64,000 nucleotides of DNA from Fimbriosthenelais zetlandica (taxonomy: Eukaryota). The notes beneath the pieces are model-generated. The model made no database searches, was not told where the DNA came from, and saw nothing but the letters and a program-made list of their open reading frames with translations. Shown piece after piece: positions 3,819 through 39,514 of the stretch. Position 1 is the stretch's first letter; every line of letters starts with the position of its first letter. The translations under genes were made by a program, and so were the position numbers. The stretch lies in the NCBI GenBank assembly GCA_977030845.1, contig OZ365110.1, positions 37,634,001-37,698,000 of the forward strand, in the 5' to 3' direction.

Positions 3819-4760
3819 ATCATTGCATACAGTGAAACAGGCCTTATCACTCTAAATGAAAAAGTCTGATGTGATTAGTATAATAGGATTTCCGTCACAG
3901 TAGCAAACGTATCAGATGAACAAAAGAAGGAATACAAGAAACAAATGATATATGGGATCATAATATTGATCATTATATTGGCGCTTTTAAGCGCTACGGT
4001 GACAAAGTCACATCATGGAGGCAAAAAATATACTATAGCCTGGATATATTATGGCTGTGGGTCGAATAGCAAACTATGGGCCAGAAAATATGACAAGCAA
4101 CTGATCAAGCTACAAACTTTTCACTTTACTCAACATGGAGGAGGCAACAGATATTAGAATTACCAACCTTCAGCTTGCAAAGTAAGATTACTTGGATGAG
4201 CAACTCAATATATTGTGTGAGCAATTGAATAATGTCCCCAACATCCATTTTTGTGGTCATTTGCTCTACTTTTAAATTGAAGTTTTTGAGTTCTCCATGC
4301 ATTGATTATCCCGACCAGGGAAAAGAAGACTCAACATATATATCGAAATACATGTAGTCTAAAGTGTTTCATACAAGGTTACGCAGTCAGTCCTTACGTT
4401 CAAAGATACAGATCTATAATATATGGGAATGAAAGTAACTGCCCTTGCCTGCATGAGAACATATCTGGTAGTTATTGCTATAGTGACCTATTGCTGCACC
4501 AACTATTCCATTAAGACTCGCAGCCTCATGCAAATATTTTATATTTTTGCTAGCAAACAGAATCTTATATTATTTCAATTTCAATGAATGAGGAAATAGA
4601 AACTCCTACGTGATATAGCTTTATATGGAATTTAATTATGTTGTGCAACTGTTGAATATAATGAGACTTATTATATAGGCAGATGCATCCTACAGAAAAT
4701 GTTCTCTTTGTGCAGAGAAAGACTTACTTGGCTAGGCAAGGGATAGTATTATCAAGCTTA
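3819..4760 (+). mobile_element. Decayed non-LTR retrotransposon (LINE) AP-endonuclease region
   Basis: Broken frames give IIAYSETGL (3819-3845; cf. xIIxLSETWL), DYLDEQLNILCEQLNNVPNIHFCG (from 4186; cf. ..xxGDFN), LIIPTRE (~4290) and TWLGKG (~4725; cf. PWxTxG), in the expected order. Many stops and frameshifts; boundaries approximate. Confidence 0.45.
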
Positions 4761-7125
4761 TGACAATGCATCATAATTCCAAATGTCTTCGACTTAGAAC
4801 TATAACCAATGCCCTTTAGTTTAGTGCTACATAGACCATCCAACATGTCTTTGTTCCAGGTCTCATATAGTCTATTTGAGTATAGGGCTTTACGTTTTAG
4901 GGTTTCGAGGTCTAAACCGTATAGTACGGTACAGTCCACAGTACAACTTAACTAAATAATGGTCTGTAAGAGCGTGCACTATGGGATTTGGTGAATTAGT
5001 AGATAACACAGAAAAGGGGTTGGAGAGTACTAAACGGACCTGCCTATTTACATTCAGTCCAAAAGTCTGCATCTCACAATGTGTATGCTAAGCCACACAC
5101 TCCATGAATCATACATATAGTCTAGAAACTAGCATAATCAGGACTGTACTCAGAAGGCACTAAAGATGTCAGAGCTAATCATTAAATACATACCCCACAG
5201 TCCTGACCTCATTCCCGAAAAAAAATGATGGCATCAAATGGGCATAAGAGCTATAGAGGGCCAGGGGTGGCGCTGGTCTTTCATCAAATTAGAATCTATT
5301 TGACCTAGCTGTACATATTTAATATGATGTTGGAGAGAAAGATATACAAGGGCTTTCTCGTGGTGTTATTAAATGAATATTGTGTTACATTCTAAGCTAA
5401 AATACTCTTAGGTTTCACTCACATGTGCTAGGGGACACGGAACGTGTAAATATCGGTTTTCCATACAAAGAGTGAAGGGGATATCTCACTCTCACTACTT
5501 GGGTCTGGGCCAAAGTAAAGCTTTTTCGTCTTTTCCCACCAGTAGCCTATTACACTCCAATAACCAATTTCGTGATATAAAATTAGAATAAATAAGTTAA
5601 AGTTAATACACCCAAAGGTTTTTATTTGCAAATAGAATAAAATAAATCAAGAAAAATAACACATGATCATGTGCCTATAATAATTACGTTTACTTCCATT
5701 TCTTTTGCAATCGTCATAATACAGACCTTTTCTAAATATAACCACATAAAATGTTTTTATGTTGTGCTTACTTCGGGAAAGAAGTGAACAACAGATGTTT
5801 TTCTGTTTTATGATACATTTTGTCATATGTACTTAACAGAAAAGAACACTGATAAAGTGCATTACAATGTCTACTGTATATAAAACACTAATGGATCTGA
5901 TCCTAACTAAATGCCTGCTGCAGGAATGTATGCATGGAGGTTCTAGAAATGCCCTGTGGTTAAACCTAAATTATGGCTTCCCACACGCTCGTAAAGGCAA
6001 AGTTGGCAGAGGTATATTCCCAGGAGAAGTATTCATTACATTTATGTATGATTCTGCCGCAGAACCGCCCATGTGAACCAAACATACCGAGTGTTAAGAA
6101 ATCGTTTTGCCCTTGGCATTTGAATCAGAAATATCAGGCGACAATTTGAAGGGCAAGAAGATAATTAACGAGGGAGAGATTATAACGCTTTTAATATGGA
6201 TTATTTTTATGGATGTCTGAATCTATTACATAATCAGTCAATATCAATCTTGATGGTTTTATCCCTCTCAGGGTTTGTCAAATGCAGTGAACCCCCAGTG
6301 AGGAAAGGAAAAACAAAAATGACATTTCCCCCGTGCAGTTTATCAAGACATTAACGTGCACAGGAAAATCATGGACATTAAGCAATGCCTTTAAGGTCAA
6401 TGATTTTTACAGATATTCTCCCATTCCACGAAGACAGATTCTCGTAAAAATATCTGATATTTGTATTCATACTGAGCAGTAGCATACCTTATTCATCTTT
6501 TTTGTTTGTGTAGTGTAAGGAAATGGGACATTTGCTCTGGGAACTTTTCATCTCCCGCAAAAGTCCCCTCTGCACTTTTCTGATAGGTGCATTTTTTAGG
6601 AAACAAAATATAAATATTCTTCATTGAAGTATCCTAGTATCGGTCGCATCATTAATGAAAAATGCCCTTTCTCCAACTTAGGAAAATCCCTTAAAAAGTA
6701 GTAGGTCAACTGAACAGCTCAAAGGTTTACCTTATTTAATAAAGGGGGTGAAATTTTCTTGAAGGGAATGTAAGGTAAATGCCTGTAGTTAGTATTAGTG
6801 TTCCTGTTTCAGCAGTTCATTACCTCGCCAATTTAAATCATTTAATGGCAGTGTCCTGTAACAGTCAATTTACTTTCATCCACCGAGGAAAGTTTTCAAT
6901 TGCACTTCCCAATGAACGAATAATCATTATGGATATGGACACTTCATAAAGTATTACCAAATGATTACGGCCAGAAATATATCTGTGGCAGGGCACACTT
7001 GTCAGTGTAGGTTAATTTCGGATTAGGCAATTTGGCATTTATAATATAAGTTATAATAGTTATTCTTTATCTCGGAGATGCTGTAACTATTTTTAATTAA
7101 TTTAAGAGAAAATAATCTGATTTAC

Positions 7126-7566
7126 CTCGGCATCTGAAGCTTCACGGAGCTGAGTTCCAGAGGAATGCAGAACGCCAGTCTCCTCAGTATCATTGAGAGT
7201 GGTGTACCGAACCCACACCTGAACACAGGGGAATGCCGAACGATAACAATCCATATGACTCCCATGTCCTACCGACAAGCATCTCTGACACTGATGATCG
7301 TCTTTAATCTTGACAGTGCTTGTCACCTGACATTGTGACTCCACAAAGTCCTTAGCTGAGAGGTGTTCTTTAAGTAGTATTTCCCACATTAGTACCCCAG
7401 CAACCACTGACAGAAAGGCTAGGATAGAAAGGAATGGACAGAGGAGGGTGTCCAGTCGGGTACTACACCGGGTTCCATCTTCCTCATCCCGGCTAGGGGT
7501 CCTACTCCGAACACCTGTGGGTTTCTGGTGACAGCAACAACACCTACACATATCACAACATGCCAT
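7126..7566 (-). CDS. First coding exon of a calcium-activated K+ channel beta-subunit-like (KCNMB/CaKB-domain) protein, paralog 1
   Basis: tcaacATG start; 147 codons: Cys-rich N-terminus, hydrophobic TM1 (LLCPFLSILAFLSVVAGVLMWEILL), loop with ESQCQVTS, C-x2-C, FPCVQVWVRY and GVLH; phase-0 donor GAG|gtaaat at 7126/7125. Second exon (CSY..., TM2) not found in the window. Confidence 0.8.
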
Positions 7567-7969
7567 GTTGATATAATGTATCTATTATCAATGTAATCAA
7601 TATGGAGTTAGCAATATTGCACCTTCCTTTATCTGCACTGAAGGTCCCTTTGTCTATGCTCTCTGAAGTATCTGCTGGTTAGGCGGCATGTCATACAATC
7701 GGATTCAAGAAATGTGTTCAATCTTTTCATCCAGATACACAAAGAGTGTGTTCTGATGTTATAAGATATATAGACATAGGGATCACATTAACGGCAGAAT
7801 GACATTAGTTCCAGGAAAACATCTTTCCATACAAGTCTTGCTGTCTTCGGGACCGGTAATTCACTCTAGGTTTTCCACCTTCAGACGTGATTAGGTTTGC
7901 AATGGATTTACTCTCACCTTACATCCAGGACAGGCTTTGGCAAAACTTATCATTCACCACAAAAAAAAA

Positions 7970-10060
7970 TATCTCATAAAACCATCTCACTGTCATTTGG
8001 CCTTCAGAATGGCATGGTCTAAGAGCTGGGATTATCCAATGTGAAAGAAGCAAAGAGTATTAATCACAAGACAGATGGTTTGTCACAAGCCACATGTCAG
8101 AACAACATATAGTCTTTGCTTATTTATTACAGACAGAGATGCTTATTTCCCCAGTTATTTATAATCCAAATTCGAAAACTCCATCACACTATGGTAGCCA
8201 GTTAGCAACTGTAACCTGCTTTTACTCATGCCCCACTCGCACCAGGACGGATATAAAAATATCGATTTTCTGTAGCGATAATATCCACTTACAAGATAGA
8301 TCTGGCCTTTGCATGAAGGATTATGACAAGTCCAAAGCTAGAGAGATTGTTCATTGGGCGAAAAGTGGTAGTTTGGAGTGGGATATAAGAGGTCGCGTGA
8401 AAAACATAAGGTCCTTGTGAATTCCTGATGGGAGTCAGTATTATCAGAGATGATTTTTCTCCTTCCGTGGCTCTCTCATATAGTGCCATCTGAGGGTCTC
8501 ACGGTAATTAAGCACAGAGCTATATCTGGTGTCTGATGGTCCAGATTAGGCTGATGTTAATAGCTTTTCCAGCATATCGTGTCTTCTTCCACAGAGCAAA
8601 GACTCGATCCCACATCCAGTAGGATTATATGTTGCTATATGTATGATAAAGCTCCAGTTCACAATGCCTAAATATTATACAGCCAACATAGATCAGTTAG
8701 GTAAAGAAATCTCCGATGAAAAGTGTAAGGAGAAGGCATTCAAAGTTAGTGACATAGATGGTTATATATAGCATGAGGTGGAAGCAAATTATGCCCAAAC
8801 TCAAGACCAGTCAAGTCTGCCATTCTTGGACCTCATAAAACTCTGCTCTTGTAAATCCTTTTAAACGGAATGCCAATCACGATCCAGTGCCTTACTATCC
8901 ACTGCCGACGGGCAACTAGAATAACATAAGAAAATACTCCACCGACGGAGAGCCCGCTAAGGCAAGTTGGCAAGTGCAGTCCCAGGTCTCAGGTTGTGCA
9001 TGTGTTAAACACTTCAAGCAATAGTGAATCTGTGATGTTCTTTGAGGCAAAGGCAGTGTGGAGCGGATCGAGGTAGAATGGTGCTGATCTAGGAGCTGTT
9101 GATGATAAAAGAGTTCTAATTATTAAGTTGTAAGGGAGTAATGGTTTTGGAAGATACTTTCAAGCAGCCCTCTGCCGATTCTCTCCTAATAGGTGCTTCC
9201 ATGTATGAATGCCCTCAATTAATGCTCCTAAATCTCGTTAGGGGCATAGGCGAATGGCATGTTAATGAGGAGCTTCTTTTGAGGCCCACCAGAAGACACT
9301 CTGCCTGTGTACTTCCTTCCCACTGGGAATGGAGAGAGAAAAACACACCTTACAAAATAAAAGGCGTTCTGATTTCCATGAGAGAGCTAGAAAAATATAT
9401 CCGCACAGGAATGAATTATGTAAAGTCAACTTTATGTCTTCTTAAATTCACAGAAGATTTGATTTTGACGTGACATGAGAGAAAGATGTGACATCTCCGA
9501 CAAATCTTTCCCAGAGTTATTGGAATGTTTTAATCAAGAATAAGTCAACCTTGAATCAAGAGGTCATCCAACCCGATTTACTTCTGGTAAAGGATATTTA
9601 AAGGACGAAGACATTCACTTCTTCATTAAAATTACTGTCGTTTCTCGAATACAATAATGCCAATCAGGACTAAAGACTTTCAGGCATTGAAGTCATTAAA
9701 TCTAATGGCTATAGTCAAAGAAGCATAACATCAGCCGCTGGGTAGGCCCTATGTAGGCAGGTGCAGCAAAGAATGCTTGAGAGATATAGCAAGTTGTAAG
9801 CAAAAGCACTGATTTGCTTTGTGCCCCGAGACATCGCAAAAGACTTAAAATTAAATTTTGGATTTCTGACATGGATAAATCTAATTTAGTTGGGAAGGAT
9901 GGATGGAAGCAGGTGCCTATTCAACTATCATCTGGGCTCAAAACATAAATGATGTAATTCCAGATGCTCCTCTGATATCTCATTTACAAGGCTGACTTTT
10001 CATAAGAAGCCACAGCTGAGGTAATAATGAATAAATTTAGATCAATAGGACGAAGACGTT
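7970..10060 (-). mobile_element. Decayed DIRS-like (tyrosine-recombinase) retrotransposon
   Basis: Minus-strand fragments in RT-then-YR order: RLRPIDLNLFII (10023-10058; cf. RPIxDLxxLN), SIHPS (9893-9907), LDDLLIQG (9548-9571; YLDD catalytic motif), WDVG (~8610), VTVANWL (~8200), ILKAK*Q*DGFMRY (7970-8026; YR C-terminus). Heavily frameshifted; true ends not located. Confidence 0.6.
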
Positions 10061-28900: not shown

Positions 28901-30669
28901 CATACCACTCCCATTCCACCAACTTTTATTATGCCCTGAAACAAATGTGGTGTAAAGATAAGATACCATAAGCATCTGGCATCAAATTTGCTTTATATAA
29001 AGTATTATGAATATAAGTGTTCTTCAGAATACGATATTAATTTAAGCCCCACTGGTTTTGACAAATGGCTGGCTGTCACACAAGACTGATCTGAAGAATT
29101 TAAGTTGAATAAGATGAATTGGTAAGTGTAAATGGGATACTCCTATTTAAATGTCTTTTGAATTATGTTAATTCTGAAGTGAAAGGGGAAAGTATATAAA
29201 AGTGCATATAGTTTTCATTTCTTTTTAATTAAACTTACCACCACCACCACCACGATCAATCCCACTAAAATAACAACACTTTGGAAGACGTCTGTCCATA
29301 TCACAGCTTTCATTCCACCCTGGAATTGTTCACGAATTTATAAGTATAATTGAAATATTAAATAAACATAACTATGCCCAAATTAATTATAACAAAATCT
29401 GAATTACGCTTGCAATAAGTAAACATTAATCTGAGACATCATATCAATTCTGACACTTACTATTGCGGTATATATTGTTGTAGAAATGCCACACAAAACT
29501 ATGGAGGCCCAAACAGGGAATCCGGAAACTGGATGAGGAATAATTCACGAATTACATCTATGTCATTAAAATGTTCTAAAATTTCATAGTTATATTTATT
29601 TGTACTGTGAAAATGTCGAGGCTTTTTAGCCTCTGACCTTAACTTCCTGAATAAAATAAACTGAATCCCATTGAATACACATACCAGCCTCCAGGGCTGA
29701 CGACGGGGCGTACAAGCCTGTCGCATTGGAGAATATCTGAATAAAAAAATGATAATATATTGCACCTGTTAAATCTAAGACGAAACGAAGTTTATATTCT
29801 GCAAACTATAAGTTTAACATAAGGAATGAAGAGGACAGCTACTTACCATATTTAAAAGCATCATAATAGTACCTAATCTCCTGACTATATTGGAATCAAA
29901 CCTCATGAAAAAATACTGAAAAGGGGCACAAATTATAAATAAGGCAATTGCTATAAATTAATCAACAAGGTAATATTTGAATTCTCCAAAATGATGGTCT
30001 AATAAAAGGATCGAAATTATTGAATCTTCTCTGACTTACCTCAAAGGAACTAGTGAGTTTGAGAGGGTAAAACAAAGGTACAAATATAAGAGCACCAAAG
30101 ATGGAGCCTAACACAGCTGCTATGAGGTACAATGAGAACTGAGTACCAAATGCATACATCTCAGCTGGAGTACCCAGAATACCAATAGACGACACAAACG
30201 ACACCAGAATAGACAAAGCCACGGGTATAACCTATAATTGACAGGATAAGATTCAAAGTAATATATACCTATAACTTATTAAATACGATTATGACAAAAA
30301 TGAATTAATTTTAAAACAATTAGATTAGGCTGGGGATCACTATACAATAATAGTAGGTTTTCGTTGCTACAGCTTAAAATAAATTCAAATAATTTTATCA
30401 GTTAAATCATTAAAAAGTAGAAAAAGGAGATAAGAGTACTAGTAGGTAAAGCAAAAAATGTATCAAGACTTAAAATAAAATAAATTTAACCAAAACGTGT
30501 TATCTACTTTAAGATTCCTGTCTCCCATGAGGTATTCTTCATTAGTTTTCTGCTTTCCTCCAGAGAGGGCAAAATATAAACCAATGCCGAGTGAGACGGC
30601 GATGGTGGCCAGAAAAACGATATAATCCGCAACATGAAAATGCGGCTTTCCAGGCATTGACGTCGACAT
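25962..30669 (-). CDS. Sodium-coupled monocarboxylate transporter / sodium:solute symporter (SLC5A8/SLC5A12/NIS/SMVT group)
   Basis: 15 GT-AG exons in consistent phase: 30508-30669, 30040-30231, 29847-29915, 29685-29736, 29461-29528, 29239-29319, 28862-28935, 28502-28639, 28141-28276, 27724-27809, 27487-27599, 26981-27051, 26761-26847, 26298-26503, 25962-26205 (593 codons). Family motifs: [82 protein letters not shown]-terminus unresolved: read-through to stop at 25902, or one more exon near 25710-25820. Confidence 0.93.
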
Positions 30670-33600
30670 TTTGTCTGAAAAACATTGAATGAAAACAAAA
30701 AGTTTATTAAACATTTTAAGAAATATTATGTAGGCCTATAGGTGTAAATTTCGGAAATCTGTGGACTTTACACCAACTATATGGAAAGGAGGACGAGTGA
30801 AAAAGAAAATATCAATGGTTTATATATTTAGCGGGCCGTTTACGAGTTTTGGGCTATCAATGCATCATCAGTTGCAATTGTTTTGTCCATTGGGAAATGA
30901 TGAGATTTGTACACTTGAAAAAGCCAAATTACATGTACTCAACTATTGGCCTGGGGAGCACAACATTCACTACTTTATAAAAGTCCCGCTAGGTGGCGAA
31001 TCTTATAGAATGCCAAGTGAAATGTTAGCCTAGCTCACGGCTAAGAAATCTATAAGAATAAATTTGAAAGTTATCTGTTGGGCATCTGATTAATAAAAAG
31101 CTGGCATGTGGATAATTGCTTTGCTTTTAGGCTAACATCACACAATATCTCACAATGTCCCATATAGTAGGCCTACAAATCTCAGTTGTGGGAGAGTGTT
31201 TCAATATTCCTGCCCACAACCATAGCAATGACGTAAATTCACACCCAAATGTGGAAAGAAAAATATGCAGCGTCTTTCATTTCATTTCAGTGTGACATTT
31301 TTATGAATAGGTTCATCCAAGCGCGAGTTTGGAGGAACATCTCGCTTTCATCAACCATTGAGTTTACACATCAAGTCTCAAGTGACCGAACACAAAAGTA
31401 AAACCATTCAGTTGCTCGTTGACAAGGAATTTACAACAAACCAGACTTTCAGGTCAACATAACATGCATGTGGGGTTCATTCGTTCTTTCTACTTCCCGT
31501 ATTGCTATAGTTTATAGCAAAAATAAAATTCATTAACGTATTTGAGTTATGTGATTTTACTTCTTCAGCTTGCCTTATTATTTACATTGTCATCACATTG
31601 CATCTTTTATTAACTTAGTATGTCCCCATTTGTCCCCACTGGGGACATGATAATATAGGCCTGTATGGATGCTGTGAGTTTAACATATATTTTTCTTAGC
31701 CAGTTCCAAGGGGAGGAGAATCGATGTTAGTGGGTTATCCGATCCTCCTATATTCCTATCAGGTTTTGACTATATTACATGCAATAGGTTAGCCTATAGG
31801 CTATTAAAAACTTGAAATCAATCAAACAAGCTCGTAAATCAAATGAATGACGCAACAAATAAAGAACCAATTAAAGGTAAATAAGGGCAAATCAGTATTA
31901 ATAATATTCATAGGTATACATTTAGGTCTACAATAGATGTTAGACAAAATGTAGTATTATGATAATAAAAGGATGTGTGGTAAAATGATGGAGGAGGCCT
32001 AAAATCATCTGGTAACAGAATCAACCTGAATTGTTAACAAAAGTGACGTCACTACCGTATGACAGCTACTTCAGCAACGGAAACCATTTTATTTGAAGGG
32101 CCAAGATTATTCTAAAATGATAAGCAAACACATGCTAAAGGAACGAATCTTTTTCTTTGGCCTGAAGGTCAAAATTGTATTCATGTGGGATGATTCTTTC
32201 AGGTGTGCAGGTGAACTGTGAACAAGTGTATTGGCCTACATCAAATTGATGAAGGGCAACCGGAACCACTCACTCTCAGGTACAAAAAAACACTCCCACA
32301 TATTTAGGCTCCTTTACAGAAAAATAACAAAAAGTTACATGCACAGTAGAATCTTTTGACTGGGTAATGGGCCATGCCGTAGACTTACATGTACATGTAT
32401 GTGCAATTATTGCAAGAGATCAACGTGACTTTCGTGAAGTTGTGTGTAACTTATAGGCCTAGGCCTAATCAAAGGATTGCATTGAGGATTTATGTTCCTC
32501 TTTAGCCCGAAACCAGAGAAGATAATTAAGGTCAATACATGCTCTAATAATAATATTATTATATCTGGGACTAGTTGCTCTTTTCATTTCAAATTGAAAT
32601 CTATTGAAATTGCCTGTCCTTTTGAACGCAATTTTTATAAAGTGAAAGGAGAGAATGGTCCTTTAATGTTATAGATCTATATGTACACAGCCGGCAAAAG
32701 TAGGAGACGAACAGGATATGAAAGATGTTGGGTGGATTAATATTGATCCCTCTTGGGATGTTTCGGGATATAATGGAAAGAGACAATATTTATGCTTTGT
32801 TTGAATAATGATTAAACCGAGGGCCATGCTATATACATGTCCGTACCGGTACTTAAGCTTTAAGATGATAACGCTTGACAGAGTATACTTGTGTAGTATG
32901 TCTCTCTATATAATAATTAATTAAGCCTATAATATCGATTTTATTTCGACATGCCAGAACCATGTCCACAATTTTAAGGATTATTTGAGCAGATATATAC
33001 GTTCCATATTTATAAATCAATTTCAAATCCCGGCGAACTGGAACGAAGGAATGTAGATGTAAAGCCTTGTTGGGCCTCTAAAATGCCTTTTAGTAATGCT
33101 CTAAATATAAGGGAACCCATCCAATATAATTTTTATTCATGCCAGTTTCCAACTAGAGAAGTGGCTACATCATGTGTTTATGCTCTACTTCTCACTGTAA
33201 GTGTAACCCCCTTCTTGGACATAACACAGTTAAAAATAGACAAGGTCATTGTGGTCATTTTTGTGCGGGATTGGGACAGAAATTACATAGCATAGCCTAC
33301 TTTTTAGGAATGTGTTAGCGTGGGTTAACAATTACATGCGAGATGTAGGCCTAGTAAAGATGGAGAACAGAAGGGTTTGTATAAATCTATTGAAATATAT
33401 CATAGACTATTTCGTTAAAAGAAGTGCGAGTTTTCAGCACAAAAAACATCATGTTACAAACAAATGTGCAATGATAAGCAACGTTTGATCAAAAATAATG
33501 TTATCACCAGTTTTGATCCAGGTTAGTCAGACAAGTGATAACAACATGTACGCATACCGATAAGCACGCTATAAGTCATAATTATTATCAGACACCTAAA

Positions 33601-36260
33601 TGACGAAAAACAGTCTATAGTAATAACCATTAATATAATTTGAGCACTGCTTGTCTATTTTATTAAATTTGGTATCTACTATTTCACAGTAGTTTTACAA
33701 TATTTAGGAATTGTGGAAATAGCAATGTTAAAATATCCTCCCAGTATCAAACATAAACCAAAAAAAGACACTTTAAGAAGTGTGACAAGCTTCTCTGCCT
33801 GCATGGGAAAATCTAGATTGAATACCAAATGTGGTATGAGGGACATTTCCCCTGATTTCTCCCTGTGGGTTGTACATTGCTGGTGAGGGTGGCACTATAC
33901 AGCGTTTCACAATAAATAATTATCATTCCTCAAATCACGATGAAAATTAGCCAATATCCGTCCATAATGAATAGCAGTGGGAGTTAACATACACTTGCCA
34001 GTTTCATTTGAAGGCGAACAACAAAAAAAGTATTTTTTTCTTTGAACATGGTGCAGTGAGGTTTTCTTAGGCTAATCTTGACTGAATGGACCTAGCTTTG
34101 TATGTCAATATATTCGTCAAGTGCAAGATGTCAAAGCCCTTGAGTAAACGCTGAGAACCGAGTACTAGCCTACCTGTTTAGAGTCGCAGAGCTTGCCAGA
34201 TTTTCTTTACTTTCCCCAGGCACGTTTATGTACACCCGCTCTCCTACAAGAGCTGGACGGGTGATGAACAGGCTATACTCCAGTCACACGTGCTCTTTAA
34301 ATCACTACTGTGAGCTAGGACTTTTATGTAATCCACCATATAATATACAATGTCATGTATATTTTAATGTAACGTTATATATAGTTCCTAAGACAAGTCA
34401 GAACGTTCCCAAAATGACATGAATCGGCTATATCCATAGATGTGTATTATTTTAATTTCACACTGACTATTACTTTTTGTTATATCAAAGTTGGTGCATG
34501 GATGGATAGTGTAAATAAAGGTGCCTTCTACACACACATTGTACAGTGATTCCTTTATACATGTGAGTATTAACGTCTACTTTCCCTTGTCATGTCACCC
34601 TCTAGCTGCTCCTTATTCAACATGATCAATACGCCTTCCACCTCCTTCCCTATTTTTATGTCCCATGGGTGGTAGGCCTATATATTGGTTATCAGGAGGC
34701 TCTACAAAATGTATATCACAGAGGTCCTCTCTGGGCATTCCCCCAAGACAGTCTCATGAACTGGTATGTATACACATACTGTATATCAATGATCACATCC
34801 CACCAATCATCACGCCCTAAATCCTTGCTTCGATATCCATTATGCAAGGTATGTGTAGGCTATAATAATGGGAAGCAGGGAGAGGGTTGAGCAGTAGGTG
34901 GCCAAGACTGAGTTGTTAAGTTGTAAGTGTTTGGAGGCAGCAAAGCATATATCACCGCCTCTGGAATCACCTGTGACTATATCTCTACTGAGTCTAAGGT
35001 AACCCCATGTACGTGTACACAACAATTGAGAGCACCCATGTGTAGAAATCTATAGCATCTCACGGCCATTAGCCAGCATGGTTGGGCACTATCTTTTAAG
35101 AAGGGGTGAAGGTTAAAGCTCGGGGATTTAGAGGACATAATTATATCCCCCTCATTTTCTTTAATCTAGACCTGCATGTGTGGAATAAATTTTGCGGACT
35201 GTGATTTATTATCTATGTGAAATATACAATCCGCAGTTAAAAATGTAATAATTATGCCCTTTATAATGCCTGTATGCCTATACATGTATATAGGTCTAAT
35301 GTGGGGGAAATATAGAATGTGATAATGACCCAATTCTGTACATTTTTAGAATATATTGCTGAGTGAACTAGGCCTACATGTATAAATTTATCTAATAATG
35401 TGCCATAATCTTCCTGTGTCAGGCAACAATAAAAGAGAACAGAAAAGAAAATAGGAAGGGAAAAAAACACTTCAGGCGTTAATGACAATCTTCACATAGG
35501 CCTAATACATGCAGTGAACTCCAAATTATGGATTTTATTAGGATATAATTATGTAAATCAAAGAGTCCAACTTGCTATATGCTCACTAAGTCTAAGAAAT
35601 ATCGGTTTATCCGGATAACAGTCCAATATCGATGGCATGCAAACCTAACTTTATGAGTGGCCCTCAAAATGGGTTATGAGTGAATGCGAGCTACTTTGAG
35701 ATGGCGCTTGCGGCAGCGTTGACATTGTAGGGCCTATATCGGGCGAGATCACCCCCCTCCTTTTTTTGGTGGCCGGATAACCCTGTAAATTATCGTTAGC
35801 GTTATATATGACATTGCACCATATAGTTCACATTGCATGTGAACATTCATGAGTTCAGAAAATTCATGAAGAGCGGATATTATCCTACATGCTGGCTAAT
35901 TAGCCTACATGAAACCTCAAACACAAAATATAACCCAGACTAATGAAGTGATACGATCGACACACTTAAAAGTTAGCCTACTTTAGGCCTATAGCCTAGG
36001 CCCTATTTTGCCTGCCATGGTATCAGAACTCATAGGTAAATATTTAGTGTCGTAGCCTAGGCCTACCGGTAGGTCAATGCCCAAAGAGCCCCCAAATCGC
36101 TCCATAGCCTACAACAATCGCCCGCGCCTCCGCAACGTGGCGCCACCTCTGTCAATTTAATGCCCCGCTTCGCCAAAGCTAGGCCTATAGGTAGGCCTAG
36201 GGGGCAATTGTGATAGGCCTAGGCCTATGCTAATGTGCCCCCCCCCCCCCCCCCCCTTAC

Positions 36261-36276
36261 CTGTTGCTTTGGCCAT
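36261..36276 (-). CDS. Candidate distal first coding exon of the SLC5 gene (MAKAT-D-K...)
   Basis: attATGGCCAAAGCAACAG|gtaagg is a strong phase-1 donor. Splicing to the acceptor at 30675/30674 (cag|ACAAAATG) gives GAC AAA ATG, in frame with the SLC5 ORF. A chance frame match has about 1/3 probability. Confidence 0.5.
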
Positions 36277-36285
36277 AATATGTTC

Positions 36286-36340
36286 TGTGCTCACTGCTGG
36301 AATGCTACGGTCACGACGTACTTGGCCAATCGATGAACTA
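36286..36340 (+). repeat. 55-bp direct repeat, copy 1 (X1)
   Basis: TGTGCTCACTGCTGG...CGATGAACTA is identical to 36447-36501. Confidence 0.97.
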
Positions 36341-36354
36341 GGCCTATAGCCTAT

Positions 36355-36446
36355 CAATCTTATCAGCCATCTTGGTCCGTTGCAACTGGTTGCGGATAAC
36401 AACTTTCACTATTTTTATTAGTTTCCATTTTCGACAGTGGTGGCGC
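36355..36446 (+). repeat. 92-bp direct repeat, copy 1 (Y1; left target-site-duplication-like copy)
   Basis: CAATCTTaTCAGCCATCTTGG...GGTGGCGC matches 37808-37899 with one mismatch (36362 A vs 37815 G). Confidence 0.97.
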
Positions 36447-36501
36447 TGTGCTCACTGCTGGAATGCTACGGTCACGACGTACTTGGCCAATCGATGAACT
36501 A
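36447..36501 (+). repeat. 55-bp direct repeat, copy 2 (X2), at the LINE 5' junction
   Basis: Identical to 36286-36340; joins directly to the LINE coding sequence (...GAACTA|TACCAATGC). Confidence 0.97.
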
Positions 36502-37311
36502 TACCAATGCGAAGTATGGGGGTTTACAAAAGCGGACATAGTGGAGAGACTGCATCTGAAATTCCTTAAGTACATAACAGGGGTTAAAACCTCAACTTGC
36601 AACTCAATGGTCTATGGCGAGCTGGGAAGATTCCCTCTCGAAATCGCGATAAAAAAAAGGATGGTGGGCTTCTGGGCCCGAACAGTTTCAGGGAAAGCCC
36701 AGAAATTGAGCTGCGTCATGATAAATAACCTATACCAGCTCAGCGAACAGGTGGACGTCGCATCCCCATGGCTGGCGCATGTCAAGAGCATACTCGATAG
36801 TTGTGGGCTGAGCGTTGTCTGGCGCTCCCACAACTTCTCCAGTGTTGAATGGCTGAAAGCCTCAGTGGAACGTAGTCTCCAGGACCAGTTCATTCAAGCC
36901 TGGAGAGCGGATCTTGCGAACAAGTCCTCCTGTGACCTCTATGTAGAATTTAAACAAAAATTTGATCTCAAAAAATACCTACTAGTCAATAACAATAGGG
37001 TAAGCAGAGCAATCTGCCAATTCAGAACAAACAATTCTAGGCTCCCCAAAGTGACCGGCAGATACAGGAACATTCCCAGAGGGGAGAGGTTATGCACCTT
37101 GTGTAATTACAGACAAGTAGGCGACGAATACCATGTCATTGTCGAGTGTAAACACGAGACTGTAGTCGAAATGAGGGCTAAATTTGTTCCCCAATATCTG
37201 CTCACAAACCCTTCCGTTCACAAATGCACCTCGTGGATTGGGAGCCACTCTGACAGGGACTTAAACCGGCTCGGTAAATTTTTATGTGGGGTTCTGCCCC
37301 TGTTTAAATAG
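36463..37311 (+). CDS. Potential 282-aa chimeric ORF: host-derived start (MLRSRRTWPIDEL) fused in frame to the LINE ORF2 C-terminus
   Basis: ATG at 36463 lies in X2 (ggaATG) and is in frame with the stop-free LINE segment. Expression unproven. Confidence 0.35.
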   Translation: MLRSRRTWPIDELYQCEVWGFTKADIVERLHLKFLKYITGVKTSTCNSMVYGELGRFPLEIAIKKRMVGFWARTVSGKAQKLSCVMINNLYQLSEQVDVASPWLAHVKSILDSCGLSVVWRSHNFSSVEWLKASVERSLQDQFIQAWRADLANKSSCDLYVEFKQKFDLKKYLLVNNNRVSRAICQFRTNNSRLPKVTGRYRNIPRGERLCTLCNYRQVGDEYHVIVECKHETVVEMRAKFVPQYLLTNPSVHKCTSWIGSHSDRDLNRLGKFLCGVLPLFK

Positions 37312-37807
37312 TGTAACCAATAAGTCTAGCTGATTGCGATCTACTGTCATGTAATTTTCTAATAGGCCTATGCATAAGTGTAGTCTTGATACTTAAGTGA
37401 ATCGGGAGGTAAAAGTGATGGATGATTCTTGTCATAAAAGTGATTCTAGTCTTGAACGTACAAATTAACTCTCTATAGTCAACGGTCATGAAAACGTATT
37501 ACCTACTGGGTCTCTATGACTACCTAATTATGTTTTGTCTTAATTTGATTTTTTTTTTTTTTTTTTTTTTATTCGCTTAATCTGATACAAGTATAGTAAT
37601 ATAATTTGCTGACACTGTACTCTATTTGCTCCAACATAATTACTTCAATTCTGAAACTTTTCGATTGCCGTGTTTTCGCTGTGTGTAGGCCTATAATATA
37701 TTGTATTCATATTTCATATTTTGTATTCATATTTTTTTACGCTCCATACCTCTCTATGTGGTCAGAGCTTAATAAAAACCTTGAAACCTTAATAAAAACC
37801 TTGAAAC
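36502..37807 (+). mobile_element. Young 5'-truncated non-LTR retrotransposon (RTE/RTE-X-like LINE): ORF2 C-terminus, 3'UTR and repeated tail
   Basis: Open frame YQCEVWG...VYGELGRFPL...SPWLAHVKSIL...C-x2-C-x9-H-x4-C knuckle (CTLCNYRQVGDEYHVIVEC) to stop at 37311; 3'UTR with T-run (~37548-37570); tail AATAAAAACCTTGAAACCTT-AATAAAAACCTTGAAAC (37771-37807); flanked by the 92-bp duplication. Clade assignment is inference. Confidence 0.9.
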
Positions 37808-37899
37808 CAATCTTGTCAGCCATCTTGGTCCGTTGCAACTGGTTGCGGATAACAACTTTCACTATTTTTATTAGTTTCCATTTTCGACAGTGGTGGCGC
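37808..37899 (+). repeat. 92-bp direct repeat, copy 2 (Y2); presumed GADD45GIP1 core promoter/5'UTR
   Basis: Matches 36355-36446; ends 14 nt before the GADD45GIP1 ATG; contains a YY1-like GCCATCTT. Confidence 0.95.
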
Positions 37900-37913
37900 C
37901 TTCGTACCACAAC

Positions 37914-39514
37914 ATGGCGGCCAGAGTCATGCTGCTCGCTAGAAGAAGTCAGAAATTATTCTCTATCTCAGGACGTAATGATCCTGGTCAGTTTATACCA
38001 GTACAGAATCAAGCAGGAACTAATATCACGTCCAGTCGATACGCGTCTTGGTTTATAAGTAAAAAAGGGGTTCAAAAAACTGTGGAGACGGAGTCGGTGG
38101 CAGACCAGGAGGAGGCAGATCATGATGCTGAACTTGAAGTTGAAGTCAGGGCGGAGGAGCAGAAGGCCACTGATGCGAAGAGGGATGTGTCTCGTTTACC
38201 AGAGAAAATGAAACCCTTCTTGGAACATAATTTTAAAATGCCTGAGGTGCGTACGACTTGTTAAATGTTAAAAAATAATTATTGTGAGTAGACCACGGTT
38301 CGTTGACACAGTCCTGTCCGTGGATGTTGAGCGATAAAAGGTCAGTTTGCCATAGACTCTTTCCGAAACTACAGGTCTTGATGGTACCGGCATACAAGGG
38401 CACAAGTTTTGGTTGCCTAAAATTTAGCCTAAAAGTGCATTCTGAGAGCCCGCAGGTATATCCACCTTGGGATACTCATACTATTACCGGTCCTATGTCT
38501 TAATAAATATAGGCGAAGTGTCACGAATAATTCTTAATTCTTTTTTTTCAGAGGATTTTTGAACATGACTTTAAACCATCTCGGGAAAGAAAGTTTTATG
38601 CATACTTCGGAAGTGCCTCCAATATTGATCCACGGGTGGCGTGGCCAACGAAAGACGAATTAGTAGAAATGCAAGAATTTGAGAGTGAATGGGAACCATC
38701 CCTACAAGAAAGATGGGGAAAATTACGACAGGAGCAGGAGGAAGAAATGGCACAGCGCCAAGTACAGTGAGTGTTGTCTTTCTCTCTCGTTTGATTGTCA
38801 TCCGTTAAATTTTCTACAGTAACCTTCAGTTAAAAGGTTTACTATCAAAAGAGAATTAAACACATGTGTGAAAGAAATAGACCAATAGTTATGTCATTAT
38901 TAAACTGTACTAGTAGTTAATACATGTGGTACGAATTTTATTTATTTCAGTGAAGCTAATGTGGAAAAGGCTATGGCTCGAATGCCTGAATACATCGAAC
39001 AGTTTAGGAAGAAATTAGCCAAGCAAGAGCATGCTTTAGAAGCACAGGAAAAGAAACGGAAGGTTTGTATTTTTGTTTCTTGTTATTTTAACTCCAGTAA
39101 TCAAACGTGGGTGAGGACATGTGAAAAAAAGTGGCTCCAAACTACAAAATAAAATTAGACATCCGTTTCTAAGTATTGTCGTGCAACCACTTTGTAAATT
39201 ATACAAACGACTCCCACCCCAACTGTCGTTAATAATTGCATCTAATTCCGAATTCTAATTTGAATGTTGTTCTGAAATATCCTAAATTGTATCTATAGGG
39301 TCTCGTGGAGGAAGCCCGGGACTATTTTGGATATAATATCGACCCTCGTGATCCACGCTTCACGGAAATGCAAGAAAAGAAGGCAGAAGAGGAGGTAAAA
39401 TTAAAACGAAAACAGCGCAAGGAACAGAAGGAGATGAAAATGGAAGCTGCGCTAGAGAGAATAAAAGCTGAGAGTGAAAACTTTAAAAAAGCCCAAAGTA
39501 GCTCTCAGTCATAA
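37914..39514 (+). CDS. GADD45GIP1: GADD45G-interacting protein 1 / CRIF1 / mitoribosomal protein mL64
   Basis: Exons 37914-38246, 38552-38766, 38951-39062, 39299-39514; GT-AG, phases consistent, 291 aa. Arg-rich presequence-like N-terminus; motifs FGSASNIDPRVAWP, EWEPSL, MARMPEYIEQF, EARDYFGYNIDPRDPRFTEM. Confidence 0.9.

What the first reader, a model, noticed from the sequence alone, without database searches (positions are those of the whole stretch)
36286..37914. Young LINE inserted into a bidirectional promoter and duplicated it (92 bp), leaving each divergent gene its own copy
Seen: order X1-14 nt-Y1-X2-LINE-tail-Y2-GADD45GIP1 ATG. Y1 and Y2 are 92 bp with one mismatch, and the LINE frame has no stops. 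Established: LINE target-site duplications are usually much shorter. Inference: the empty allele had X-Y directly before GADD45GIP1, with Y as the shared core promoter. The insertion separates the genes by about 1.45 kb but gives SLC5 Y1 and GADD45GIP1 Y2, which could explain tolerance of the insertion and could uncouple their regulation.
Basis: partly seen in the sequence, partly recalled or inferred. Interest (0 to 1): 0.75.

Follow-up and report, generated by a model that had tools for sequence, protein, structure and literature searches.

The report
LINE insertion flanked by 92-base duplication
A young, cut-short jumping gene (a LINE) sits just upstream of the GADD45GIP1 gene between two near-identical 92-base copies of host DNA. 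That flanking duplication is unusually long but of a known kind, and the idea that it split a shared promoter so that each neighbouring gene keeps a copy could not be tested.

Summary
The order is X1 (56 nt), a 14-nt spacer, Y1 (92 nt), X2, a 5'-truncated LINE, Y2, then 14 nt and the GADD45GIP1 ATG. X1 and X2 match at 56/56 positions and Y1 and Y2 at 91/92.

- **The LINE is real and young.** It has an open C-terminal ORF2 remnant, a 3'UTR and a repeat tail, and is 97-98% identical to its nearest copies.
- **X and Y are host DNA.** Other copies of the LINE have unrelated flanks, so neither belongs to the element. X occurs nowhere else in the genome.
- **Best reading (about 0.55).** One target-primed reverse transcription event made a 92-nt target-site duplication. 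It also copied 56 nt of upstream target onto the 5' junction. This is the layout of Drosophila R1 "insertion site rearrangements".
- **Main rival (about 0.3).** A 161-bp tandem duplication came first. The LINE then replaced the 14-nt spacer of the second copy.
- **New here.** Y is about 80% similar to a dispersed retroposon-like repeat with at least 142 signature hits.

The promoter story is untested. The SLC5-like coding sequence starts 5.6 kb away and only a putative 16-nt first exon abuts X1. No sequencing runs, transcripts or orthologous loci could be obtained. This is an ordinary mechanism with an unusual outcome. The scan has noted this feature only on this same stretch, not on other DNA.

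The parts
30508..30674 (-). SLC5/SSF-family gene: first long coding exon (ATG at 30669-30667), with a strong splice acceptor (pyrimidine run plus CAG) 5 nt upstream of the ATG
   Evidence: sequence and translation. Downstream exons hit Pfam SSF PF00474: 29965-30231 at E 2.8e-4 and 29218-29337 at 26.5 bits, above the cut-off.
36261..36276 (-). Putative first coding mini-exon of the SLC5-like gene. ATG at 36276-36274, five and one-third codons (MAKAT), donor GT at 36260-36259. It is in frame with the exon at 30674. Inferred, with no RNA evidence.
   Evidence: Read. An in-frame join has a 1-in-3 chance expectation.
36285..36340 (+). X1: unique 56-nt host segment containing a CCAAT pentamer at 36326-36330
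   Evidence: only two copies in the genome, both here
36341..36354 (+). 14-nt spacer present only between X1 and Y1. At the equivalent place in the second copy sits the LINE.
36355..36446 (+). Y1: left copy of the 92-nt duplication (putative target-site duplication). Old fragment of a dispersed retroposon-like repeat.
36446..36501 (+). X2: second copy of X at the LINE 5' junction (56/56 identical). It overlaps Y1 by 1 nt. Its last 4 nt (ACTA) also match the LINE.
36502..36507 (+). 6 nt of uncertain origin at the 5' junction: filler, or LINE sequence with 4 clustered mismatches
   Evidence: comparison with four other copies
36508..37311 (+). LINE ORF2 C-terminal remnant: 267 open codons plus a stop, lying downstream of the reverse-transcriptase domain
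   Evidence: Relatives carry RVT_1 immediately upstream of this segment.
37312..37767 (+). LINE 3' untranslated region
   Evidence: shared by other copies
37768..37807 (+). LINE tail: the terminal 20 nt doubled, with two AATAAA signals (37771-37776 and 37791-37796). Other copies end in repeats of an 8-nt unit.
37808..37899 (+). Y2: right copy of the 92-nt duplication, directly after the LINE tail
37914..38249 (+). GADD45GIP1 (CR6_interact) exon 1: ATG at 37914, 112 codons, GT donor at 38250
   Evidence: Later exons hit PF10147 (39305-39511 at E 3.6e-10). Exon 1 itself has no Pfam hit.

Best explanation
A single retrotransposition event produced the whole structure.

1. The empty site read X - 14 nt - Y - 14 nt - ATG of GADD45GIP1.
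2. A LINE endonuclease nicked the bottom strand at the left edge of Y, and reverse transcription was primed there. The doubled terminal 20 nt of the tail record slippage at initiation.
3. cDNA synthesis stopped inside ORF2, which gives the 5' truncation.
4. The cDNA end then switched template to the upstream target, landing 14 nt left of the nick at a 4-nt match (ACTA). It copied 56 nt, which became X2.
5. The top strand broke 92 nt downstream of the first nick, at the right edge of Y. It joined the cDNA end through 1 nt of overlap.
6. Fill-in then produced Y1 and Y2 as a 92-nt target-site duplication.

Shown: the anatomy, the junctions, that X and Y are host DNA, and that the element is a LINE. 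Inferred: the order of steps and that it was one event. Whether the template for X2 was DNA or a plus-strand RNA is open.

Consequence, read from the sequence only: the upstream side keeps X1-14-Y1 intact. GADD45GIP1 keeps only Y2, shielded from upstream transcription by the two polyadenylation signals in the LINE tail.
For: - **It is a LINE.** The segment is 95-96% identical in protein to copies whose frame continues upstream into RVT_1. A 36% relative is full-length with Exo_endo_phos and RVT_1.
- **Its 3' end is well defined.** Eight or more copies share the 3' end up to the tail, and their flanks beyond it bear no resemblance to Y.
- **It is 5'-truncated.** Other copies continue upstream of 36508 with LINE sequence, where the window has X2.
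- **X2 is a local copy.** X is unique to this locus, so it is neither a transduced flank nor part of the element.
- **Y1 and Y2 are a recent pair.** They are 99% alike, against 82% or less to any other Y-like copy.
- **The junctions look like TPRT.** There is a 4-nt overlap at X2/LINE, a 1-nt overlap at Y1/X2 and possible filler. These are the microhomologies and extra nucleotides described for LINE 5' junctions (PMC2718515; PMC2666801).
- **The layout has a precedent.** The order TSD, duplicated upstream target, element, TSD is that of R1 insertion-site rearrangements, including the offset from the nick.
- **Long target-site duplications occur.** Examples are 126 bp in R9 (cited in PMC6895275) and 1228 bp in 1 of 25 ZfL2-2 insertions.
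- **Template jumps onto upstream target DNA have been proposed.** They are in the current model of LINE integration.
- **Young tandem duplications are rare here.** Only one array with a period of 60 nt or more at 98% identity was found in 211 kb. A chance landing of a LINE from a family with about 20 detectable copies inside one is therefore unlikely.
Against: - No empty allele, intermediate allele, sister-species locus or reads could be examined. The one-event claim rests on parsimony alone.
- My rough odds against the two-step rival are only about 1.5-7 to 1.
- Other copies of this LINE family show no long target-site duplication. Their boundaries are uncertain, however.
- A 56-nt locally templated upstream copy at the junction of a 5'-truncated APE-type LINE is not a documented routine outcome. 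In R1 the duplicated upstream sequence is thought to come from a tag carried on the element's RNA, which cannot apply here.
- Y-like units form tandem arrays elsewhere, so this sequence type may be prone to tandem duplication.
Confidence: 0.55

Rival explanations
1. Two independent events. A 161-bp tandem duplication of X-14-Y arose first, with its junction at 1 nt of overlap. A LINE then inserted into the spacer of the second copy and deleted its 14 nt (a short target-site truncation, with no target-site duplication).
For: - The Y1-to-X2 junction is exactly what a head-to-tail duplication of the 161-bp unit gives.
- Short target-site truncations occur in about 20% of ZfL2-2 insertions.
- The ACTA overlap fits ordinary 5' microhomology joining.
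- Y-like units are tandemly repeated at other loci.
- Other copies of this LINE family show no long target-site duplication.
Against: - It needs two rare, recent events within the same 161 bp. The copies differ at 1 of 148 positions, and the LINE family has only about 20 detectable copies.
- Only one young tandem duplication of comparable size was found in 211 kb.
- The tandem arrays elsewhere repeat the Y-like unit alone, never an X-Y unit. X is unique.
Confidence: 0.3
2. One retrotransposition event, but X2 was copied from an RNA and not from DNA. The reverse transcriptase switched from the LINE RNA to a plus-strand transcript that starts at the left edge of X, making a chimeric retrocopy. 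The left end of X (36285) would then mark a transcription start site. This is a sub-case of the best explanation.
For: - X2 has the same orientation as the LINE and lies between the left target-site duplication and the truncated LINE. That is the layout of template-switch chimeras; the U6-L1 type is recalled from memory and was not checked here.
- LINE reverse transcriptases jump between templates without homology (PMC6895275).
Against: - There is no transcript evidence of any kind.
- A plus-strand start 8 nt from the putative minus-strand ATG (36276) would make the two genes' 5' ends overlap, which is possible but unusual.
- The product is identical to that of the DNA-templated version, so the sequence cannot tell the two apart.
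Confidence: 0.1
3. Assembly artefact: the duplicated X and Y segments are an error of the assembler around a real LINE insertion.
For: No reads could be laid on the region, so this is not formally excluded.
Against: - The copies are not identical (one mismatch in Y).
- The junctions show typical retrotransposition signatures: the tail doubling and the microhomologies.
- The repeats are far shorter than reads of any modern platform, and there are no Ns nearby.
- Assemblers collapse short repeats much more often than they create them.
Confidence: 0.03

Closest known systems
R1 'insertion site rearrangement' (ISR) junctions in the Drosophila melanogaster group (Stage and Eickbush 2009, PMC2718515)
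   Same: Same order of parts: upstream target, target-site duplication, then a second copy of sequence lying upstream of the nick and ending a few bases short of it (9 nt in R1, 14 nt here), then the element, then the second target-site duplication. Microhomology or extra bases lie at the junctions.
   Different: R1 is site-specific for 28S rDNA. Its ISRs are on full-length copies, with target-site duplications of 17 bp or less and duplications of 16-27 nt. The duplicated piece is thought to be a tag carried on the R1 RNA. Here the LINE is 5'-truncated and not site-specific, the duplications are 92 and 56 nt, and the copied piece must have been templated locally.
Long target-site duplications of LINEs: R9 of bdelloid rotifers (126 bp, cited in PMC6895275) and ZfL2-2 in DT40 cells (1 of 25 insertions, 1228 bp; PMC2666801)
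   Same: The second-strand break lies far downstream of the first nick, giving a duplication of tens to hundreds of bases.
   Different: In R9 the long duplication is the rule and is site-specific. Here it is a one-off in a family whose other copies show none. Neither precedent includes the extra upstream copy.
Template-jump and microhomology 5' junctions of 5'-truncated LINEs (ZfL2-2, L1, R2; PMC2666801, PMC6895275)
   Same: Short overlaps (4 nt and 1 nt) and possible filler bases at the 5' junction. A jump of the cDNA onto upstream target DNA is part of current models.
   Different: Extra sequence at such junctions is usually a few bases, not a faithful 56-nt copy of nearby DNA.
L1 template-switch chimeric retrocopies (U6-L1 and similar).
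   Same: A 5' part copied from another template is fused to a 5'-truncated LINE, and the whole is flanked by one target-site duplication.
   Different: There the 5' part comes from an abundant cellular RNA encoded elsewhere. Here it is a copy of the sequence 14 nt upstream of the insertion point itself.

Membership tests
Non-LTR retrotransposon (LINE) insertion made by target-primed reverse transcription | Element sequence belongs to a reverse-transcriptase-encoding family | tested here: met
   The window's 267-aa frame is 95-96% identical to copies on C1 and C13. The C1 copy's frame continues upstream into RVT_1 (E 1.9e-19).
Non-LTR retrotransposon (LINE) insertion made by target-primed reverse transcription | Common 3' end with a tail, variable 5' truncation, and flanks unrelated to this locus's host DNA | tested here: met
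   All copies end at the same tail, start at different points, and have flanks with no similarity to X or Y.
Non-LTR retrotransposon (LINE) insertion made by target-primed reverse transcription | Direct repeat of target DNA abutting both ends (target-site duplication) | tested here: met
   Y2 abuts the tail. Y1 is separated from the LINE 5' end by X2. The repeat is 92 nt and 91/92 identical. Its length is atypical.
Non-LTR retrotransposon (LINE) insertion made by target-primed reverse transcription | APE-type endonuclease in the family | tested here: inconclusive
   Exo_endo_phos was found only in a 36%-identical full-length relative (L052). No full-length copy of the close family was found.
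CR1/L2-type LINE (Jockey superfamily) | 3' end made of short tandem repeats, not poly(A); esterase-type ORF1 | tested here: inconclusive
   The tail is made of 8-nt repeats in the other copies. The GDSL-lipase ORF1 was seen only in the distant relative L052 and slightly below the Pfam cut-off (32.3 against 32.9 bits). No phylogeny was made.
R1-type insertion site rearrangement | Target-site duplication followed by a duplicated stretch of upstream target, then the element | tested here: met
   The order Y1 - X2 - LINE - Y2, compared with the description in PMC2718515.
R1-type insertion site rearrangement | The duplicated upstream stretch is carried as a 5' tag on a full-length element RNA | tested here: not met
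   The element is truncated inside ORF2 and X is unique to this locus.
Bidirectional (shared) promoter | Two divergently transcribed genes with start sites less than about 1 kb apart | not testable with these tools
   Divergent orientation is supported. No RNA run was listed. The SLC5-like start beside X1 rests on a hypothetical 16-nt exon.
Bidirectional (shared) promoter | The duplicated segment Y has promoter activity | not tested
   There are only motif resemblances recalled from memory: a YY1-like core at 36366-36375 and CCAAT in X. Y is about 80% similar to a dispersed repeat.

The most novel reading that the evidence does not exclude
One retrotransposition event by an APE-type LINE produced both an exceptionally long (92-nt) target-site duplication and a 56-nt locally templated 'insertion site rearrangement'. 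In doing so it split a compact head-to-head promoter of about 190 bp. The SLC5-like gene keeps X1-14-Y1, and the essential mitoribosomal gene GADD45GIP1 runs from Y2 alone. The duplication is what made the insertion tolerable, and the two genes are now regulated independently.
Probability: 0.2. Interest if true: 0.55.

Novelty: new member of a known kind. Interest (0 to 1): 0.3.

Why it matters
If it was a single event, this is a clean natural record of two poorly understood steps of LINE integration. One is where the second strand breaks. The other is a jump of the cDNA onto upstream target DNA. It occurs outside the rDNA-specific elements where such junctions were first described.

If the promoter reading is right, a long target-site duplication can rescue a gene from an insertion into its promoter and can physically uncouple two divergent genes.

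Both points are modest. The mechanism is known in outline, this is a single locus, and none of the functional claims can be tested without reads or RNA data.

Tried and rejected
- **Y or X as part of the LINE's own ends: rejected.** The flanks of other copies have no similarity to X or Y, and X is unique.
- **X2 as a 5' transduction from the donor copy: rejected.** The LINE is truncated inside ORF2 and X exists only here.
- **Reads and RNA.** Two searches for sequencing runs listed none, so read laying could not be used.
- **Empty allele or orthologous locus, three attempts:**
  - An exact look-up of the exon-1 product found nothing on record.
  - A word-based homologue search with exon 1 was blank. 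Its length filter may have excluded full-length orthologues.
  - An exhaustive HMMER search found only an unrelated repetitive 1952-aa protein.
- **Target-site duplications of other copies of the family.** No convincing ones were found and the boundaries are uncertain. This says little about typical length.
- **Rfam on Y-like loci.** No match, so there is no sign of a tRNA, 5S or 7SL head.
- **Pfam on the LINE remnant and on GADD45GIP1 exon 1.** No significant family. Identity rests on relatives and on the later exons.
- **Inverted or partial Y copies elsewhere in the window.** None.
- **A correction to my own working note.** The Y1/X2 overlap is 1 nt, not 2.
Full report
**Observation.**
- X1 is 36285-36340 and X2 is 36446-36501. 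They are identical at all 56 positions.
- A 14-nt spacer (36341-36354) follows X1 only.
- Y1 is 36355-36446 and Y2 is 37808-37899. They are 92 nt long and differ once, at Y position 8 (36362 A, 37815 G).
- Y1 and X2 share one base (C at 36446), so the repeat unit X-14-Y is 161 nt.
- Y2 is followed by 14 nt and the ATG at 37914.
- In the 447-Mb assembly X occurs only at these two places. No other Y-like sequence exceeds 82% identity. The pair is therefore local and recent, not chance.

**The inserted element.** Between X2 and Y2 lies a 1.3-kb piece with these features.
- It is 97-98% identical to copies on C13 and C1, and less similar to about 20 further fragments.
- Its frame is open for 267 codons up to the stop at 37309-37311.
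- The piece itself has no Pfam domain. The 96%-identical copy on C1 continues upstream into RVT_1. A 36% relative is a full-length element with Exo_endo_phos and RVT_1, preceded by an ORF with a GDSL-lipase fold.
- It is therefore the post-RT end of ORF2, the 3'UTR and the tail of an APE-type LINE, probably of the CR1/L2 kind. The clade was not determined.
- Other copies continue upstream of 36508 with LINE coding sequence where the window has X2, so this copy is 5'-truncated.
- All copies share the same 3' end and finish in repeats of an 8-nt unit. Beyond that, none of their flanks resembles Y.
- In the window the last 20 nt are doubled instead (37768-37807), a typical slip at the start of target-primed reverse transcription.

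**Junctions.**
- At the 5' side, X2 ends in ACTA, which the LINE also has at that point. Then come 6 nt (36502-36507) that match neither cleanly.
- At the Y1/X2 junction there is a 1-nt overlap.
- Such short overlaps and extra bases are the norm at LINE 5' junctions (PMC2718515; PMC2666801).

**How it most likely arose.** A plain target-site duplication explains Y1 and Y2 but not X2. The layout has a published precedent in the 'insertion site rearrangements' of Drosophila R1. That layout is a target-site duplication, then a second copy of sequence lying upstream of the nick and ending a few bases short of it, then the element. In R1 the copy ends 9 nt short of the nick; here it ends 14 nt short.

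Long duplications are also known: 126 bp in R9 (cited in PMC6895275) and 1228 bp in 1 of 25 ZfL2-2 insertions. Current models include a jump of the cDNA onto the upstream target strand.

I therefore favour one event with these steps:
1. A nick at the left edge of Y.
2. Reverse transcription that stopped inside ORF2.
3. A switch to the upstream target at ACTA, followed by 56 nt of copying.
4. A top-strand break 92 nt downstream.
5. Joining and fill-in.

The R1 explanation for the extra copy, a tag carried on the element RNA, cannot hold here. The element is truncated and X is unique, so the copy was templated locally. The template was either DNA or a plus-strand RNA starting at 36285, and the sequence cannot tell which.

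**The main rival.** A 161-bp tandem duplication of X-14-Y followed by a LINE insertion that removed the second spacer gives exactly the same sequence. The considerations are:
- Short target deletions occur in about 20% of ZfL2-2 insertions.
- Y-like units are tandemly repeated elsewhere.
- Against it, two rare young events would have to coincide within 161 bp.
- Only one young tandem duplication of comparable period was seen in 211 kb of fetched DNA.
- The LINE family is small.

My rough odds are 1.5-7 to 1 for the single event, so I give 0.55 against 0.30. An assembly artefact is unlikely because of the mismatch in Y, the biological junction signatures and the shortness of the repeats. It could not be excluded with reads.

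**What Y is.**
- Y is about 75-82% similar to a module found at many places.
- A 23-nt signature with one mismatch allowed hits 142 sites, against 0 for the reversed control.
- The module lies near the 3' end of an interspersed repeat of about 480 bp. That repeat's copies share a fixed 3' end but start at different points, which is the pattern of a retroposon. The module also forms short tandem arrays.
- The segment called the 'core promoter' is therefore an old repeat fragment.
- It does carry a YY1-like core (36366-36375, oriented towards the SLC5 side), and X carries a CCAAT pentamer. These are resemblances recalled from memory, not tests.

**The genes.**
- GADD45GIP1 is supported by PF10147 on the later exons, and exon 1 has the expected length.
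- The upstream gene on the minus strand is an SSF/SLC5 member.
- Its long coding sequence starts at 30669, 5.6 kb from X1, just after a strong splice acceptor.
- A 16-nt exon (36276..36261, ATG, good donor) would splice in frame to it. That would place the gene's start 8 nt from X1.
- This is plausible but unproven, so 'bidirectional promoter' remains an inference.

**The present arrangement is not symmetrical.**
- The SLC5 side keeps X1-14-Y1 whole, plus X2.
- GADD45GIP1 keeps Y2 only. The two AATAAA signals of the LINE tail lie just upstream, and a new CCAAT is formed at the tail/Y2 junction (37807-37811).
- Whether the insertion is fixed, or merely one haplotype of one animal, is unknown.

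**What could not be done.** No sequencing run was listed. No gene with the exon-1 product is on record. No homologue of exon 1 was found by either protein search. The empty allele, the sister-species locus and transcription start sites are all out of reach here.

**Verdict.** The mechanism is a rare outcome of a known process. The functional story is open. Interest 0.3; a new member of a known kind.

Noticed in passing
window 36355-36446 and 37808-37899; loci L003-L010; G000:C1:61007468-61007963 (L005:1130-1625): Y belongs to a dispersed repeat family. A 23-nt signature hits 142 sites (control 0). The module sits near the 3' end of an interspersed element of about 480 bp. That element's copies share a 3' end but are truncated at various 5' points, which is retroposon-like. 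It has no Rfam head. The module also forms tandem arrays with periods of 71-100 nt.
   Followed up: partly
window 36463-37311 (+): An ATG inside X2 (36463) is in frame with the LINE remnant, giving a 282-codon chimeric ORF. This is the subject of another first-stage note. In X1 the same ATG (36302) opens only a 15-codon ORF, closed by a TAG in the 14-nt spacer (36347-36349).
   Followed up: partly
L052 (G000:C10:15214000-15223999), minus strand 4302-9879: An apparently intact full-length LINE, 36% identical to the window's element in the C-terminal region. It has a 1228-aa ORF2 (Exo_endo_phos plus RVT_1), an ORF1 with a GDSL-lipase/esterase fold, and directly upstream a 363-aa ORF with a NADAR domain. 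That domain is not a usual LINE component.
   Followed up: no
window 37807-37811 and 37771-37796: The junction of the LINE tail and Y2 creates a new CCAAT pentamer about 100 nt upstream of the GADD45GIP1 ATG. The ancestral CCAAT (in X) is now 1.3 kb further away. Two AATAAA signals in the doubled tail lie just before Y2.
   Followed up: no
L014, L015 and window 3' junctions: Three of the youngest copies of this LINE have ACCAA(T/A) right after the tail. This may reflect a target preference or pairing between tail and target. There are too few cases to judge.
   Followed up: no
L016 (G000:C1:28904707-28905309) and L017 (G000:C10:54085495-54086077): Two 3' fragments of the same LINE, about 600 bp each, share both flanks. 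The fragment was therefore copied as part of a larger repeat or segmental duplication, not inserted twice.
   Followed up: no
window 36238-36256: A run of 19 C (G on the minus strand) lies immediately after the putative splice donor of the SLC5-like first exon. The palindromic motif TAGGCCTA recurs many times in 35900-36360.
   Followed up: no
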